Assembly (NCBI GenBank): GCA_965649765.1
Contig: OZ287756.1
Coordinates: forward strand, 35,216,001 to 35,280,000
Direction: 5' to 3'
From: Bispira polyomma
Taxonomy: Eukaryota
Length of the DNA stretch: 64,000 nucleotides
The notes under the pieces were generated by a model. It worked only from the letters and a program-made list of their open reading frames with translations, searched no databases and had not been told where the DNA came from. Positions 53,070-64,000 of this stretch are shown here, in pieces. Position numbers and translations under genes: made by a program. Position 1 is the stretch's first letter; each line of letters begins with the position of its first letter.

Positions 53070-56000
53070 GTAAGTGGAAGAACAAAATAGAACTATATTG
53101 GAACCTCTATCAGACTATTTTATACAGGAGGTTCATCGTGAAAGACAAGATGCATTTTAATATTAAATTTAATGTTTGGAAAATAGAAGTTTGGATAGTA
53201 GAGGTTCTACTGTAGTTTATTATAAATTGACTGGTAAAGTTGTATTGATAGCTTAACCAAAAATAGCCAATAGTTAAGAATAATAGTATTGACATTCTCA
53301 AAATCAGTGACATTTTTTATTAGCTAAAAATTTCTACTAAATTTTCTCTGTTGGAAGCTACTGTATTTTGGTTTTTTTTTCATATAGTTACAAATTCTTT
53401 TAAATTGAGCATAAATGTAGTGGGGCACACAAATCTAGTAAACAAATGTAATATAACACCTTATATTGATACTTCACACCCCTAAAAATAAGCCAAATAA
53501 AAAAAAAATTGGCAAAAAATAACTGGAAAAATAGAAAAGTAAGGCAAAATAGTCACTAAAATTTCAATTACAGCAAATATCAGACACTATTCTATCACAA
53601 CAGCACATTTTGTAGGTGGCGAATTTTAAATACAGTGGTAGATTTTAGATTCCTTACAGTACAACACTTTTTTTGTTCCGCTGTAGAACTACTTTAAGCA
53701 GTATGGTTACATGGGCGAGTTCATGCCGGATGAAGAAATAGGAGCGTTGGTCGACAGTGACATGGGTATGGCGTATGACTACGCCATTAGGATCTTCCAG
53801 AGGAGATACAGTGAATACGGACTCCAAGAGACTGGTAAGTGAAGGCATGTCTTTAGTACAATGACAGTGCATGGACATTCATAGTACCAGTCCGGGCTGC
53901 TATTCCAAAAAGGTTCTAAGTCTTAAAGTTTTTGTCTCTGTGGATTTGATTGGCTGAAAATATTGTTTCAAAGAATCTGATTGGCTGAGACTAAGAAAAT
54001 TCTTAGGCTGTTTAATGTGTAAATCTACAACATAAGTCATTCTTTTTGTTGTGTGTGTGTGTGGGGGGGGGGGGTTGTTTGACACATGGTTGTGTAATTG
54101 AGACCTGGTAATTGAAAATGTAATTGTTATTAACCGAAGACTTCTTTTTATCCCATATGTATTATGTAAAAAGGTGCGGGAATTTTTTTTTAAAAATCAG
54201 ACAGACCTCCCGGTTTTTTTACTCCCTGACCGATAACATCTGATGGTTGAACAGATGTCTGCCGTCGTTTGATCTGATCTGCAGCAAATATGTTAAAAGG
54301 AAGCACCTGGTAATATTAATTAATGACCGATAAAATCGGCGGTTGTCGACTGAGAAAAACATGCCGAAAGGAAGCCCAGGCATAGTGTATATGGTTGATG
54401 TTATAATATTTCTAGGTAAGCTGGGTGCTGCCATTATCACACTGATGAACACTTGTATATGGTTGATGTTATAATATTTCTAGGTAAGCTGGGTGCTGCC
54501 ATTATCACACTGATGAACACTTGTATATGGTTGATGTTATAATATTTCTAGGTAAGCTGGGTGGCTGACATTATCACACTGATGAACACTTGTATATGGT
54601 TGATGTTATAATATTTCTAGGTAAGCTGGGTGCTGCCATTATCAGACTGATGAACACCTATGTATGGTTGATGTTATAATATTTCTAGGTCAGTTGGATG
54701 CTGCCACTATCAGACTGATGAACACATCTCGCTGTGGTGTGAGGGACATTATCACTATGGAGGACACAGGCATGGATATGCGCAAGAAGAGGTACTTACT
54801 GGCAGGTTAGTGGCTCCATCTATTGAATTTATATATCAGGCACAACCTGTCGTTGTTTTGAATTAGAATAGGGCACCGTCATTGAGAAGGGTGCGGCCAT
54901 CTTTGAAATAATATGCGAGGCCTTTATGGATTGGTTGAAAAAAAAACGACCCGGCGACCGACTAACAGGTGTCAGATTTATATTATCAGGCACAGCCGCC
55001 ATGTTGGCAATATTGTAGAATGTTTCGATGTTTACAATAAAATAAAAATGTTTTTCGCTAATTTTAGTCATTGTTGACACGTAGGTATGGTTTTGTACAT
55101 CAATATCGAAATATTTATCAAACCTTGACTAAAGTTCCGATATCTAAATGGTTGGATGAGACAAGACCTAGGCTATGTTGTAGGACTATTATCCTTTTCA
55201 GAGAACATGCACCTTAGAGGGTGCTCTCCCAATATGTTTGGATACCAGAGATTCTTACTGTATTATTTAAAAACGAAAAAAAGAGACATTCAAGGTCTTT
55301 AGTCTGGACTGAGCTAATCGATATTATACTTCACTTTTATTTATTAAGGTAGTAAATGGGAGAAGTTGGACTTGACCTACCGAGTCACCCAGTATCCCAG
55401 AGATAATGACCTCACACCTGCCCAAGTGGATAGTGAAATAGCCAGGGCCTTTCAGGTGTGGGCGGACGTCACTCCACTACGGTTTTACAGACTGCCCGAC
55501 AACTCTAACCACGAACTGGACATTGAGATCCAGTTTGCCGTGACGGGTCCCGCAGACCACGGAGACGGATATCCATTCGACGGTGAACACAGGACTCTGG
55601 CCCACGCATTTGTCCCCCACTCAACCAAACTGGGAGGGGATGCCCACTTTGATGAAGCCGAGAAATGGACACTTTACAGTGATTCTGGTGAGTGAATGAA
55701 CAACATTAATTTGATTAATTGATTGGGGGTTTAGGTTTTGCTGTCAACACATTGTGGATCTATAGGCTTACACTGGGGGGTTTTTTTTAAAAAAAATACA
55801 ATTTTTTGAAGTTGCACATTAATAAACAATGAGCAGTTTTACTGGTGTTCAAAAGCTGTGTATACTACTAGTTGGGTAAGATTCTGCACTGTCAACCACC
55901 GGGCATCGGCAGGTAACTGTCAACGTTTCCCATATAAATCCAGATATGGGGACTTCATGATAAAGAAAATTATGTATTATTGTTTCTTTACTTAAATACC

Positions 56001-59000
56001 TTGGATCTGTTATTTTACGAACTTTTTGTTATCTGAACAGACTCACTGAGACTTTACCCTTACTAGCTGTTTCGATAATACAGATAATACAGGGTATTTT
56101 ATTCTAATAAGGTAGAACCTCTATTTTCTGAACTTATATTATCCAAATGTTATTTCTCTAAAATTGATAATCTTCCTATTGGTTTATTGTAAAAATACCT
56201 CCTTGATTATCCAAGCTCTCTGAGCCGAATACTAAATCTTATGAACACACCTTCTCTCTTTCAAAGTTACATAATTTTGTTGTTACAACCTATTCCTCTT
56301 ATAAACCAAGTAACCATTTCTATATGTGTCTATCAGGTTACAACTTCTTCCAAGTTGCCGCCCACGAGTTTGGCCATGCCTTGGGCCTGGGTCACAGCCA
56401 GGACCGCACAGCTCTCATGGCTCCATTCTATGGTGGCTATATGGAGAACTTTAGACTCCCTGCCGACGATACCATGGGCATCCAGGCCCTATATGGAAGA
56501 CCAGAGGACCGCCAACCAGTGACCACCCCAAGACCGAGTCGCCCCACTACTGCTTCAACTACTACTACTCCCGTACCTACCATGGTTCCCGAGGGCCGGG
56601 ACGTGTGCTGCGAAGCCACCTTTGACGCCATCACGAAGATTGTGGACGAATACGGAGAGCAGAAGATCTATGGCTTTAAGGGAGAGTACTACTTCCTCAT
56701 TGACGAAAACAGAGGCATAGCCGATGGCTACCCAAGGCGCATCGCAGAGGACTGGCCGGGGGTGGCTGACAACCTGGATGCTGCTCTCTTCTGGGACGGG
56801 AAGTGGGAATGGAATGCTGCAGAGAGTAGATGGGTGTGGCAACATGGCGCCACTTTTCTCTTCAAAGGACGACAGTACTGGAGGGTGGAAGGCACGGGGA
56901 CGGTCATTGGACCCCACCCTATCTCACACTGGGGCTCCGACTTCCCTGCAGATATTGACGCAGCCTTCGTGTGGAAGAAGAACGGCAAGACCTACCTGTT
57001 TAAAGGTGAGCTTCTTTCTAGGTGTAACAGTAGGAGAAACCGCTATTCATCTGAACTTTTATTTATCTCAACTTCTATTTATCTGCATATTTAACTTTTT
57101 ATAATGATCATTAATATTAACACGTCTATATAATGTTCTTGATATGTTGTGCACCCATATTATATACATCCCATTGTAACAAGCAGGACAAAAATAGTGC
57201 CAGACCTTTTATTTTCCTCCACATTTTTCCTCCACATTTATTTTCCCTTTTGTATACTAAACCAGTACATTGTCCTGTTTCTTTATAAGCTAAATGCTGA
57301 CATTCCCTGTGACCTGTTTATATGGCATGTTACATTCTTGTACCTTGTTTATAAGACATCTACCTGTGACCTGGGGCAGTATTCACAAAAAGGTCTGAGC
57401 CAAGGCTTTTGCTTAGATCTAGTGTACTTTTGTGCTAGATTTAGGACAATGTCTAAACTAAGCGCTTTTGTGAATACGGAATCAGTTTAAAAACCATGTG
57501 ACATTCCTAACACCTGTTTATCAACCATATACCATCCTGTGACCTGTTTACAAGCCATATATGACATTTCTATGACCCGTTTATCAGCCTTATACCATCC
57601 TGTGACCTGTTTACTAGCTCTATATGACATTTCAATGACCTATTAATTAGCCTTATATCATCGTTTGACCTGTTTGCAAGCCATATATGACATTCCTATG
57701 ACCATATGATAACGTTCCTGTCTTGTTTGTTTTGTTCAGGAGATGAGTATTACCGCTACACTGAGGGTGAAGGTATTGACTATGGTTATCCCAGACCTCT
57801 CTCTGTATGGGGTGGACTGCCAGACTCACTAGATGCTGCCATGCAGACTCCCAGTGGTGAACAAGTCTTCTTCAAAGGAAACAAACACTACTTCTATGAT
57901 GATTATTATCTTGATGTGAGTAAATATAGAAATATTATATAAAAGTACAGTAGAACCTCTGTAACATTAACTTCTTTCCATTGTTAAAGTTTTTGAATGC
58001 AATTTCAGTTTTATCAAAATTATTATTTTCCTGTTGTTTTGTACTAATAATCTCACCCTATTTTATGAACATTCTATTATCTTACTCTGTCATTGGGTCC
58101 TTCCCAATTGTCACTCAGTGTACTGGACCAAACCACTAGGCAAGTTACTGTAACGGTAACCGGTGCGAGACCAAGTCCCTAACCACTAGGTGATGGTATA
58201 GAGTACCAGACCAACTCCCCCTAACCTCAAGGTGATGGTATAGAGTACCAGACCAACTCCCCCTAACCTCAAGGTGATGGTATAGAGTACCAGACCAACT
58301 CCCCCTAACCTCTAGGTGATGGTATAGAGTACCAGACCAACTCCCCCTAACCTCTAGGTGATGGTATAGAGTACCAGACCAACTCCCCCTAACCTCTAGG
58401 TGATGGTATAGAATACCAGACCAACTCCCCCTAACCTCTAGGTGACAGTATAGTGTACCAGACCAACTCCTCCTAACATCTAGGTGATGGTATAGAGTAC
58501 CAGACCAACTCCCCCTAACCTCTAGGTGATGGTATAGAGTACCAGACCAACTCCCCCTAAGCTCTAGGTGACGGTATAGAGTACCAGACCAACTCCCCCT
58601 AACCTCAAGGTGATGGTATAGAGTACCAGACCAACTCCCCCTAACCTCTAGGTGACAGTATAGTGTACCAGACCAACTCCTCCTAACATCTAGGTGATGG
58701 TATAGAGTACCAGACCAACTCCCCCTAATCTCTAGGTGATGGTATAGAGTACCAAACCAACTCCCCCTAACCTCTAGGTGATGGTATAGAATGTCAGACC
58801 AACTCCCCCTAACCTCTAGGTGACAGTATAGTGTACCAGACCAACTCCCCCTAACCTCTAGGTGACAGTATAGTGTACCAGACCAACTCCTCCTAACATC
58901 TAGGTGATGGTATAGAGTACCAGACCAACTCCCCCTAACCTCTAGGTGACAGCATACAGTACCAGACCAACTCCCCCTAACCTCTAGGTGACAGCATACA

Positions 59001-59996
59001 GTACCAGACCAACTCCCCCTAACCTCTTGGTGACAGTATTAGAGTACCAGACCAACTCTCCCTAACCTCTAGGTGACAGTATAGAGTACCAGACCAACTC
59101 CCCCTAACCTCTAGGAGATGGTATTGAGTACTAGACCAACTCCCCCTAACCTCTAGGAGATGGTATAGAGTACCAGATCAACTCCCCCTAACCTCTAGGT
59201 GATGGTATAGAGTACCAGACCAACTCCCTCTAACCTCTAGGTGATGGTATAAAGTACCAGACCAACTCCCCCTGACATCTTGGTGACAGTATAGAGTCCA
59301 ACTCCCCCTAACCTCTAGGTGATGGTATAGAGTACCAGGCCAACTCCCCCTAACCTCTAGGTGATGGTATAGAGTACCAGACCAACTCCCCCTAAGCTCT
59401 AGGTGACGGTATAGAGTACCAGACCAACTCCCCCTAACCTCAAGGTGATGGTATAGAGTACCAGACCAACTCCCCCTAACCTCTAGGTGACAGTATAGTG
59501 TACCAGACCAACTCCTCCTAACATCTAGGTGATGGTATAGAGTACCAGACCAACTCCTCCTAACCTCTAGGTGACAGCATACAGTACCAGACCAACTCCC
59601 CCTAACCTCTAGGTGACAGCATACAGTACCAGACCAACTCCCCCTAACCTCTAGGAGATGGTATAGAGTACCAGACCAACTCTCCCTAACCTCTAGGTGA
59701 CAGTATAGAGTACCAGACCAACTCCCCCTAACCTCTAGGAGATGGTATTGAGTACTAGACCAACTCCCCCTAACCTCTAGATGATGGTATAGCGTGTTTA
59801 AACAGCAATTATTATTATTTCTGACCTTTTTATTATGTTTGTCTTTGAGGTGATCGATGGCTACCCCAAACACAACCGTAACAAGTGGTTCCAGTGTGAT
59901 ATAAGCTGTAGTCGTGGCAGCAGAAGGCACCACCGCCACAAAAGTCAGAGACACCGAAGCCAAGTAGTTGATGTCAGGAACCGTTCACGCTCATAG
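52959..59996 (+). CDS. MMP: Matrix metalloproteinase (peptidase M10A), secreted, furin-activatable, with hemopexin domain; 7 exons, 568 aa: join(52959-53069,53687-53834,54689-54805,55349-55687,56337-57005,57740-57915,59850-59996)
   Basis: All six introns are GT-AG with compatible phases (0,1,1,1,1,0); total 1707 nt ending in TAG. Motifs: signal peptide, YFKQYGY...AIRIFQ...GLQETG pro-domain, SRCGVRD Cys-switch, RKKR furin site, [14 protein letters not shown]...[22 protein letters not shown] Met-turn, four DA-initiated hemopexin blades, terminal WFQC. Confidence 0.93.
53687..53834 (+). CDS. MMP: MMP exon 2 (pro-domain, peptidoglycan-binding-like fold)
   Basis: Acceptor ttttgttccgctgtag; NYFKQYGYM...[19 protein letters not shown]; donor G|GTAAGT. 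Confidence 0.9.
54386..54725 (+). repeat. 68-bp tandem repeat (5 copies) spanning the intron 2/exon 3 junction
   Basis: The base after TTTCTAG falls at 54416, 54484, 54552, 54621, 54689; the last copy is the real exon start. Confidence 0.95.
54689..54805 (+). CDS. MMP: MMP exon 3 (cysteine switch and furin site)
   Basis: [40 protein letters not shown]; acceptor tttctag, donor G|GTTAGT. Confidence 0.9.
55349..55687 (+). CDS. MMP: MMP exon 4 (N-terminal catalytic domain)
   Basis: [13 protein letters not shown]...[13 protein letters not shown]...[18 protein letters not shown]...[13 protein letters not shown]; donor G|GTGAGT. Confidence 0.95.
56337..57005 (+). CDS. MMP: MMP exon 5 (zinc-binding motif, hinge, hemopexin blades 1 to start of 3)
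   Basis: [22 protein letters not shown], Thr/Pro hinge, [16 protein letters not shown]; donor G|GTGAG at 57006. Confidence 0.96.
57295..57705. repeat. Degenerate ~30-34 bp tandem repeat (TGACATTCCCTGTGACCTGTTTAT..), interrupted by a CWG-type MITE
   Basis: TGACCTGTTT recurs throughout intron 5. Confidence 0.65.
57740..57915 (+). CDS. MMP: MMP exon 6 (hemopexin blades 3-4)
   Basis: GDEYYRY...[21 protein letters not shown]...VFFKGNKHY; acceptor tttgttcag, donor GTGAGT. Confidence 0.93.
58180..59792. repeat. 42-bp minisatellite, ~38 copies, in MMP intron 6
   Basis: Unit CTAGGTGATGGTATAGAGTACCAGACCAACTCCCCCTAACCT; gives the 14-aa periodicity of the minus-strand ORF. Confidence 0.97.
59850..59996 (+). 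CDS. MMP: MMP exon 7 (end of hemopexin domain and basic tail)
   Basis: [16 protein letters not shown] completes blade 4 (GYPK...W..C); pyrimidine tract and CTGAC branch-like motif upstream, but acceptor is GAG; stop TAG 59994-59996. Confidence 0.85.
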   Translation: MIDGYPKHNRNKWFQCDISCSRGSRRHHRHKSQRHRSQVVDVRNRSRS

Positions 59997-62118: not shown

Positions 62119-64000
62119 GGTCCCGCAGACCATGGGGACGGATATCCATTCGTCAACCAAACTGGGAGGGGACGCCCACTTTGATGAAGCCAAGAAATGG
62201 ACACTTTACAGTGATTCTGGTGAGTGAATGAACAACATGGATTTGATTAATTGATTGGGGGGTTAGGTTTCGCTGTCAAAACATTGTGGATATATAGGCT
62301 CACACTGGGGAGTTTTTTTTTTAAAAAAAATACAATTTTCTGAAGTTGCACATTGATAAACGATGAGCAGATTTACTGGTGTTCAAAAGCAGTGTATACT
62401 ACTAGTTGGGTAAGATTCTGCACTGTCAACCACCGGGCATTGGCAAGTAACTGTAAACGTTTCCCACATAAAGCCAGACATGGGGACTTTATGATAAAGA
62501 AAATTATGTGTTATTGTTTCTTTACTTAAATACCTTGGATCTGTTATTTTACGAACTTTCTGTTATCTGAACAGACTCACTGAGACTTTACCCTTACTAG
62601 CTGTTTAGATAATACAGAGTATTCTATTTTAATAAGGTAGAACCTCCATTTTCTGAACTTCTGTTATTCAAAGGTTATTTCTCTAAAATTGATAATCTTC
62701 CTATTGGTTTATTGTAAAAATACCACCTTGATTATCCAAGCTCTCTGAGCCGAATATTAAATCTTATGAACACACCTTCTCTCTTCCAAATCTACATAAT
62801 TTTGTTGTTACAACCTATTCCCTTATAAACCAAGTAACCATTTCTATATGTCTCTGTGTCTATCAGGTTGCAACTTCTTCCAAGTTGCCGCCCACGAGTT
62901 TGGCCATGCTTAGGGCCTGGGTCACAGCCAGGACCGCACTGCTCTCATGGCTCCATTCTATGGTGGCTATATGGAGAACTTCAGGCTCCCTGCTGATGAT
63001 ACCATGGGCATCCAGACCCTGTATGGAAGACCAGAGGACCACCGACCAGTGACCACCCCAAGACCGAGACGCCCCACTACTGCCTCAACTACTACTACTC
63101 CCGTACCTACCATGGTTCCCGAGGGCCGGGACGTGTGCTGCGAAGCCACCTTTGACGCCATCACGAAGATTGTGGACGAATACGGAGAGCAGAAGATCTA
63201 TGGCTTTAAGGGAGAGTACTACTTCCTCATCGACGAGAACAGAGGCATAGCCGATGGCTACCCAAGGGGTATTGTAGAGGACTGGCCGGGGGTGGCTGAC
63301 AACCTGGATGCTGCTCTCTTCTGGGACGGGAAGTGGGAATGGAATGCTGCAGAGAGCAGATGGGTGTGGCAACACGGCGCCACTTTTCTCTTCAAAGGAC
63401 GACAGTACTGGAGGGTAGAAGGCACGGGGACGGTCATTGGACCCCACCCTATCTCACACTGGGGCTCCGACTTCCCTGCAGATATTGATGCAGCCTTCGT
63501 GTGGAAGAAGAACGGCAAGACCTACCTGTTTAAAGGTGAGCTTCTTTCTAGGTGTAACAGTAGGAGAAACCGCTATTCATCTGAACTTTTATTTATCTCA
63601 ACTTCTATTTATCCGCATATTTGACTTTTTATAATGATCATTAATATTAACACGTCTATATAATGTTCTTGATATATTGTGCACCCATATTATATACATC
63701 CCATTGTAACAAGCAGGACAAAAATAGTGCCAGACCTTTATATCATAATGTCCACATTTATTTTCTCTTTTGTATACTAAACCAGTACATTGTCCTGTTT
63801 CTTTATAAGCTAAATGCTGACATTCCCTGTGACCTGTTTATATGGCATGTCACATTCTTGTACCTTGTTTATAAGACATCTACCTGTGACCTGGGGCAGT
63901 ATTCACAAAAAGGTCTGAGCCAAGGCTTTTGCTTAGATCTAGTGTACTTTTGTGCTAGATTTAGGACAATGTCTACACTAAGCGCTTTTGTGAATACAGA
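62119..64000 (+). pseudogene. MMP: Partial tandem duplicate of the MMP gene (3' part of exon 4, intron 4, exon 5, intron 5; continues past window end)
   Basis: Aligns to ~55546-57480. Starts mid-exon 4; 41-bp deletion (equivalent to 55580-55620) removes [14 protein letters not shown]; TTG>TAG at 62911-62913 inside the zinc motif (HEFGHA*GLGH); exon-5 copy 62867-63535 differs at 24 of 669 nt. Confidence 0.9.

What the first reader, a model, noticed from the sequence alone, without database searches (positions are those of the whole stretch)
54386..54725. Tandemly amplified splice acceptor forming a four-step AG|GTAAG recursive-splicing ladder in an MMP intron
Seen: the last ~30 nt of intron 2 plus the first ~38 nt of exon 3 occur five times at 68-69 nt spacing. 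The four upstream copies keep an identical pyrimidine tract and TAG acceptor but read AG|GTAAGC, whereas the real exon reads AG|GTCAGT. Reading on from any decoy hits a stop (TAA after ~19 codons; TGA after 5 in copy 3). Splicing exon 2 (..CTG) to a decoy regenerates CTG|GTAAGC, almost the native donor CTG|GTAAGT, and re-splicing from it restores the exact exon 2/3 junction. Established: juxtaposed 3'/5' sites define recursive splice (ratchet) points, and tandem duplication of AGGT-containing segments is a proposed route to intron gain. Inference: the array is tolerated because each decoy acts as a zero-length exon, and copy number could tune MMP output. The C/A difference at +3 may be one mutation predating amplification.
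Basis: partly seen in the sequence, partly recalled or inferred. Interest (0 to 1): 0.8.

Follow-up and report, generated by a model that had tools for sequence, protein, structure and literature searches.

The report
Tandem-copied splice junction ("mirage") in MMP
The end of an intron and the start of the next exon of a working metalloproteinase gene have been copied five times head-to-tail, a known kind of repeat ("mirage") that is common in this genome; the donor-like start of the copies is simply the exon's old first codons, and nothing here shows that the ladder is spliced step by step.

Summary
The array is real: five intron 2/exon 3 junction copies, 68-69 nt apart. At least three are in raw data from two samples. 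The MMP gene is intact and under purifying selection. It is a 'mirage' (exon-intron boundary minisatellite, described in amphioxus; the two-copy human case is CBS 844ins68). This scan noted such repeats before, elsewhere in this genome. New here: a spliced contig from a related species implies that exon 3 ancestrally began AG|GTA (Gly-Lys). So the decoys kept the old start, and the real exon changed A to C at +3. A ratchet is not needed for tolerance. In the same genome a USP34 exon has two intact decoy acceptors with no junction donor, and a nine-copy ladder has lost GT in half of its decoys. The regenerated donor is also weaker than the next copy's donor, the wrong way round for zero-length exons. 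Most likely the last acceptor is used directly, with stray decoy use re-spliced or degraded. No RNA of this species was available, so recursive or nested salvage (about 22%) is untested. Copy-number tuning has no support.

The parts
54386..54725 (+). Tandem array (mirage) of the intron 2/exon 3 junction, 5 copies of a 68-69 nt unit (about 30 nt intron end plus about 38 nt exon start)
54386..54453 (+). Decoy 1: acceptor AG ends 54415, donor-like GTAAGC from 54416
54454..54521 (+). Decoy 2: acceptor AG ends 54483; exon-derived part identical to decoy 1
54522..54590 (+). Decoy 3: acceptor AG ends 54551; 1-nt insertion and one substitution, early TGA
54591..54657 (+). Decoy 4: acceptor AG ends 54620; closest to the real exon (4 of 37 differences)
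   Evidence: present in raw contigs of both samples
54658..54688 (+). Functional acceptor (AG ends 54688); branch-point candidates at -18 (in every copy) and -39 (exon-derived)
54689..54805 (+). Exon 3 (117 nt, phase 1 to 1): end of the propeptide with the cysteine switch (RCG) and furin site (RKKR); starts GTCAGT; donor CAG|GTTAGT
53687..53834 (+). Exon 2 (148 nt) with native donor CTG|GTAAGT
53835..54688 (+). Intron 2 (854 nt, about 580 nt without the four extra units)
52959..59993 (+). Host gene: intact 7-exon matrix metalloproteinase (567 aa; Peptidase_M10 plus hemopexin). Exons 52959-53069, 53687-53834, 54689-54805, 55349-55687, 56337-57005, 57740-57915, 59850-59993

Best explanation
A neutral 'mirage'. 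One short tandem duplication copied the intron 2/exon 3 boundary (inferred). The upstream copy drifted as non-coding DNA: all decoys share D-to-G and T-to-I changes at residues that the orthologue keeps (shown). It was then amplified to four by slippage or unequal crossover (inferred). The decoys start AG|GTAAG only because the intron splits a Gly codon and the next codon was Lys (inferred from the relative's junction). Most transcripts join exon 2 directly to the last acceptor, the one nearest the exon 3 donor and followed by the full exon, as in CBS 844ins68 and amphioxus mirages (inferred by precedent). Transcripts that do use a decoy carry an early stop and are degraded by NMD, or are occasionally re-spliced. 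The array has no selected function.
For: Anatomy matches the mirage definition (PMC3087553), where RT-PCR showed no interference with splicing. CBS 844ins68 uses the distal site (PMC2630376). The ancestral start GTA is inferred from the joint placement 53837/54692 in run X4 record 26, while the other two joints are cut leftmost. GT exon starts are routine at these split-Gly junctions: 5 of 8 paralogue exon 3 starts (one GTAAAG) and 7 of 8 paralogue exon 4 starts. Such repeats are common here: 48 genome hits to a paired TTYYAGGTRAG pattern; of 18 arrays examined, 9 look like donor mirages and 2 are clear acceptor mirages. Donor-free intact decoys precede a USP34 exon (L076) and a probable exon in L086. 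In L065, 4 of 8 decoys lack GT while the real exon keeps GTGAG. The host gene is intact, with 10 synonymous and 2 non-synonymous own-lineage changes among polarisable exon 5 sites.
Against: No RNA from this species, so direct use of the last acceptor is not shown. Unlike donor-free mirages, each unit here is flanked by an acceptor and the strongest donor-like sites inside intron 2 (-9.4), so the decoys may really be engaged. Both changes private to the real exon (+3, and probably +6) fall inside the 6-nt donor window, and all 26 acceptor-side bases are identical in five copies (0/26 against 4/37, Fisher p=0.14). Both are weak hints of constraint.
Confidence: 0.62

Rival explanations
1. Recursive or nested salvage matters. 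Decoys are often recognised, because each 68-nt unit is an acceptor followed by a strong donor. The product is repaired by re-splicing from the regenerated donor (5'-to-3' ratchet), or by cutting the 68-nt units out first as mini-introns (intrasplicing), which rebuilds a single acceptor. Every order gives the same mRNA. The A-to-C change at +3 of the real exon would act as a stop for the ladder and protect exon 3 (cysteine switch, furin site) from in-frame skipping.
For: Sequence logic. The regenerated donor has U1 pairing -8.0 against -5.0 at the real exon. The +3 change is polarised to the real exon and post-dates the first duplication (parsimony). Units have a donor, a branch candidate and an AG. 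Recursive and nested events occur in short human introns, though as a minor route under 1 kb (PMC10156609; 10.1101/159350). L060 shows a similar pattern (decoys GTGAG, real exon GTGAC).
Against: The next copy's donor is stronger than the regenerated one, so donor competition would favour a 68-nt frameshifting exon (PMC8605326). The EJC represses regenerated donors after splicing (PMC8184009). The relative includes exon 3 despite its GTA start. Residue +1 after Gly varies freely among homologues (K, Q, R, E, D, I, T). Donor-free ladders are tolerated. The exact pattern 'GTRAG then GTYAG' has only 4 genome hits, and none of the other three looks like a repeat in the 80 nt shown.
Confidence: 0.22
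2. Mildly harmful leak: a sizeable share of transcripts use a decoy acceptor or include a 68-nt poison exon and are lost to NMD. The gene tolerates the lower output and nothing is regulated.
For: All acceptors are intact and identical. Decoy-started exons would be 185-390 nt, a normal size, and all carry early stops. Donor competition favours inclusion.
Against: Published mirages gave no aberrant mRNA. The host gene stays under purifying selection.
Confidence: 0.12
3. A selected rheostat: copy number tunes MMP output.
For: None beyond plausibility; mirage arrays vary in length in amphioxus.
Against: The array is absent from the distant orthologue, such arrays are scattered over unrelated genes, and no copy-number or expression data exist here.
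Confidence: 0.03
4. Assembly artefact.
For: No listed contig spans the whole array.
Against: Copies carry private differences, and decoy 4 plus exon 3 lie on one exact contig in three runs of two samples.
Confidence: 0.01

Closest known systems
Mirages: minisatellite-like tandem duplications of exon-intron boundaries (amphioxus Adh3, BflGb6/BflGb9, TnC, PGBD5; PMC3087553, PMC3902484)
   Same: Tandem units made of intron 3' end plus exon 5' start; several copies (3-6 in BflGb6, 5 here); unit size in range (10-160 nt); splice signals kept in many copies; near-identical inner copies with a diverged terminal real exon; host gene intact.
   Different: A different animal (not identified by me; earlier notes call it an annelid). 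Every decoy here also carries a near-consensus donor at the junction. Length polymorphism and normal splicing were not tested.
Human CBS c.844_845ins68 (PMC2630376)
   Same: 68-bp duplication of an intron/exon junction giving two nearby 3' junctions; the distal one is strongly favoured and the mRNA is normal.
   Different: Two copies rather than five; no ratchet role reported in the passage read; the primary mechanistic paper (PMID 12228232) was not available.
Recursive splicing ratchet points / RS-exons (Drosophila Ubx, kuz, Bx; PMC8605326)
   Same: Juxtaposed acceptor and donor, followed by a short out-of-frame cryptic exon with a downstream donor (68 nt here, about 50 nt in flies).
   Different: Ratchet points lie mostly in long introns, are ultraconserved, and usually have the stronger donor. 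Here the intron is 854 nt, the sites are recent and unconserved, the regenerated donor is weaker, and no intermediates are shown.
[quoted passage not shown]
   Same: Duplication of an AGGT-containing or intron/exon segment that activates a GTAAG donor.
   Different: No new intron or exon is gained here: the copies are zero-length or poison segments inside an existing intron.

Membership tests
Mirage (exon-intron boundary minisatellite) | Tandem repeat whose unit spans an exon-intron boundary | tested here: met
   boundary confirmed by the relative's spliced contig and the orthologue
Mirage (exon-intron boundary minisatellite) | Copies keep splice signals while the authentic exon is the terminal unit | tested here: met
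   five intact AGs; only copy 5 is open
Mirage (exon-intron boundary minisatellite) | Recurs at other genes of the genome | tested here: met
   L060, L065, L076, L086 (acceptor type), L036 and about 9 donor-type arrays
Mirage (exon-intron boundary minisatellite) | Length instability between haplotypes | tested here: inconclusive
   contigs collapse the repeat; copy number per sample cannot be read
Mirage (exon-intron boundary minisatellite) | Normal mRNA despite the repeats | not testable with these tools
   no RNA run of this species; indirect support from purifying selection
Recursive splice site (ratchet point) | Juxtaposed 3' acceptor and 5' donor motif | tested here: met
   four TAG|GTAAGC sites
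Recursive splice site (ratchet point) | Short cryptic RS-exon with downstream donor | tested here: met
   the next copy supplies a donor 68-69 nt downstream for decoys 1-3
Recursive splice site (ratchet point) | Regenerated donor stronger than the RS-exon donor | tested here: not met
   U1 duplex -8.0 against -9.4 kcal/mol; a crude proxy, not a trained splice model
Recursive splice site (ratchet point) | Conserved site, typically in a long intron | tested here: not met
   854-nt intron; single acceptor and no echo in orthologue L089; intron of the close relative not available
Recursive splice site (ratchet point) | Splicing intermediates or lariats at the site | not testable with these tools
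   no RNA of this species; contigs drop rare forms
Matrix metalloproteinase (M10A) | Peptidase_M10 domain with HExxHxxGxxH, hemopexin repeats, propeptide cysteine switch | tested here: met
   PF00413 E=1.9e-29 and 4.1e-18, PF00045 E=1.1e-19; motifs read

The most novel reading that the evidence does not exclude
A recently born, self-clearing splice ladder. The decoys are regularly used and removed by recursive or nested splicing in a sub-kilobase intron, and after the duplication the real exon lost its own donor (Lys to Gln at +3) so that re-splicing stops there and does not delete the cysteine-switch exon. If the same asymmetry (decoys with a donor, real exon without) were enriched across this genome's mirages, it would show ratchet points arising from junction duplications.
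Probability: 0.12. Interest if true: 0.65.

Novelty: new member of a known kind. Interest (0 to 1): 0.27.

Why it matters
As a neutral mirage it is one more example of a described repeat class, useful mainly as a warning that AG|GT ladders arise from split Gly codons. It is still a clean test case for an open question: how the spliceosome gets past intact duplicated acceptors, and whether recursive splice sites can be born by tandem duplication. The intron is short, there are four decoys with predicted junction coordinates, and the +3 change in the real exon is polarised.

Tried and rejected
RNA test in the same species: no RNA run holds the stretch; the one RNA-like run (X4) is a related species and contigs only. 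X4 shows no depth on 54417-54563, which says nothing about this species. Genome-wide test of donor loss at real exons: exact patterns gave 4 hits in one order and 1 in the other, too few and confounded by donor mirages. The raw excess of paired GTRAG hits (48, against 12 reversed, 16 for CT and 15 for GA controls) was rejected as evidence of ratchets, because half of the 18 arrays inspected look like donor mirages. Copy number from contig depth: not usable. An apparent donor echo at L038 did not hold. An in-frame tandem-exon reading was rejected: units are 68-69 nt and every decoy frame stops. The spliced model was searched exon by exon, by reference; the joined protein was only translated in a script to check the frame and was not sent to any search. 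The large representative-protein search was not used, as the protein family is settled. One paper search and one findings search failed on syntax; PMID 12228232 is not held.

Full report
Observation. Five acceptors end at 54415, 54483, 54551, 54620 and 54688, inside one array of period 68 with 5.0 copies and 95% matches. The last 26 intronic bases are identical in all five. Copies 1-4 continue GTAAGC and run into a stop (18 codons after the split Gly, or 4 in copy 3); copy 5 continues GTCAGT into the 117-nt exon 3. In three runs from two samples, one exact 325-nt contig (54615-54939) holds decoy 4 and exon 3. It starts where a 31-letter word first becomes unique to copy 4, which implies further copies in the reads (inference). 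The array is therefore real, although the exact count of five rests on the assembly.

Host gene. A seven-exon MMP with an open 567-codon frame, with Peptidase_M10 and hemopexin domains by Pfam, searched exon by exon. The joined model was not searched. Intron 2 is 854 nt. Against a disabled 3'-half duplicate just downstream and the related species, the exon 5 changes that can be assigned to this gene's own lineage are 10 synonymous and 2 non-synonymous (only sites listed could be polarised). The gene is functional, so the array is tolerated somehow.

Where the donor-like start comes from. The intron sits in phase 1 of the Gly of the TG-x-LD motif in all eight paralogues found and in four homologues from another assembly. 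Exon starts there are often GT: 5 of 8 paralogue exon 3 starts, one of them GTAAAG, and 7 of 8 paralogue exon 4 starts. Run X4, from a related species, has a 1809-nt spliced contig laid as 53668-53837, 54692-54803, 55347-55686 and 56336-57006. The second and third joints are cut at the leftmost possible place. By the same rule a GTC start would have been cut at 53833/54688; the observed 53837/54692 is what a GTA start gives. So exon 3 of the relative begins GTA, almost certainly GTAAG (Gly-Lys), and the exon is included in its mRNA. I could not read that contig's letters directly, so this is an inference from the alignment. It means the decoys keep the ancestral start, and the real exon changed A to C at +3 after the first duplication. 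The more distant orthologue L089 has a single acceptor and no echo. It agrees with the decoys at +6 and with the real exon at +10 and +19. The decoy lineage thus took two changes at conserved residues (D to G, T to I) before it was amplified, and the real exon took one or two, both in the first six bases.

Is a ratchet needed? A genome search for two TTYYAGGTRAG motifs 45-75 nt apart gave 48 hits. Of 18 arrays inspected, nine have exon-like sequence upstream and look like duplicated donors, and two are clear duplicated acceptors. In L065 (nine 76-nt copies before a Pfam Lips exon) every AG is intact, four of eight decoys have lost GT, and the real exon keeps GTGAG. That is the opposite of selection for a ratchet. 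In L060 the decoys read GTGAG and the probable real exon GTGAC, like this locus. The control search with GA found L076, two intact decoy acceptors with no junction donor in front of an exon of USP34 (PDB match E=6e-18), and L086, with four such decoys. Intact decoy acceptors are therefore tolerated here without re-splicing.

Would it work as a ratchet? The geometry fits: each unit is an acceptor, 68 nt and a donor, like a fly RS-exon (PMC8605326). Any order of recursive or nested cuts ends in the correct mRNA. Three things argue against it being the main route. First, U1 pairing is -9.9 for the native donor, -8.0 for the regenerated decoy donor, -9.4 for the next copy's donor in its unspliced context, and -5.0 for the regenerated donor at the real exon (crude). 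Donor competition would then favour including a frameshifting 68-nt exon. Second, the exon junction complex suppresses regenerated donors (PMC8184009). Third, introns under 1 kb prefer conventional splicing even where recursive lariats exist (PMC10156609). In favour: the decoy donors are the strongest donor-like sites inside the intron, and the real exon lost its own. One substitution at a freely varying residue cannot be told from drift.

What is known. The structure meets the definition of a mirage; BflGb6 has the same intron-end-plus-exon-start units in 3-6 copies, and RT-PCR suggested no interference with splicing (PMC3087553; PMC3902484). Human CBS 844ins68 is a two-copy, 68-bp case in which the distal site is strongly favoured (PMC2630376). 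The term 'mirage' came to me from earlier scan notes on this genome; I checked it in the papers and confirmed recurrence on loci fetched here. I did not test their figure of one exon edge in six. Notes of other ladders with GT decoys and a GC real exon are unchecked leads for the asymmetry test.

Verdict. A real feature and a new member of a known repeat class. Direct use of the last acceptor is the most likely route (0.62). Recursive or nested salvage is possible and untested (0.22), a leak to NMD less likely (0.12), and tuning by copy number unsupported (0.03). Interest 0.27. 

Noticed in passing
window 62119-64000, continuing beyond the window (L041 654-5214): Tandem duplicate of the 3' half of the MMP gene (from mid exon 4 to the 3' UTR, about 95% identical). 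Disabled: deletion in exon 4 and a stop in the zinc-binding motif; the hemopexin part is still open.
   Followed up: partly
window 54689-54805: The cysteine-switch motif reads SRCG instead of PRCG; the orthologue L089 and most paralogues have Pro.
   Followed up: no
L076 1304-1600 (minus strand): Three-copy acceptor mirage (84-88 nt) before a USP34 catalytic-domain exon; decoys intact, no donor at the junction.
   Followed up: partly
L065 1202-1945: Nine-copy, 76-nt acceptor mirage before a Pfam Lips (PF25228) exon; all AGs intact, GT lost in half of the decoys, real exon starts GTGAGG.
   Followed up: partly
L060 1506-1810: Four-copy, 40-nt acceptor ladder: decoys read CAG|GTGAG, the probable real exon CAG|GTGAC; similar to this finding, gene not identified.
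   Followed up: partly
L036, downstream of the exon 3 donor: About 13 copies (roughly 40-nt period) of the exon 3 donor in an MMP paralogue: a donor mirage.
   Followed up: partly
L004, 431 nt upstream of the exon 4 acceptor: Short degenerate echo of the exon 4 acceptor (TTTCAG|GTGGT) in an MMP paralogue.
   Followed up: no
window 58177-59792: 42-bp minisatellite (38.6 copies) fills most of intron 6 and is also present in the duplicate; it does not span a splice site.
   Followed up: no
L002-L031: The genome holds at least 30 MMP catalytic-domain matches, some multi-exon with shared intron positions and some in long uninterrupted frames (330-640 aa).
   Followed up: no
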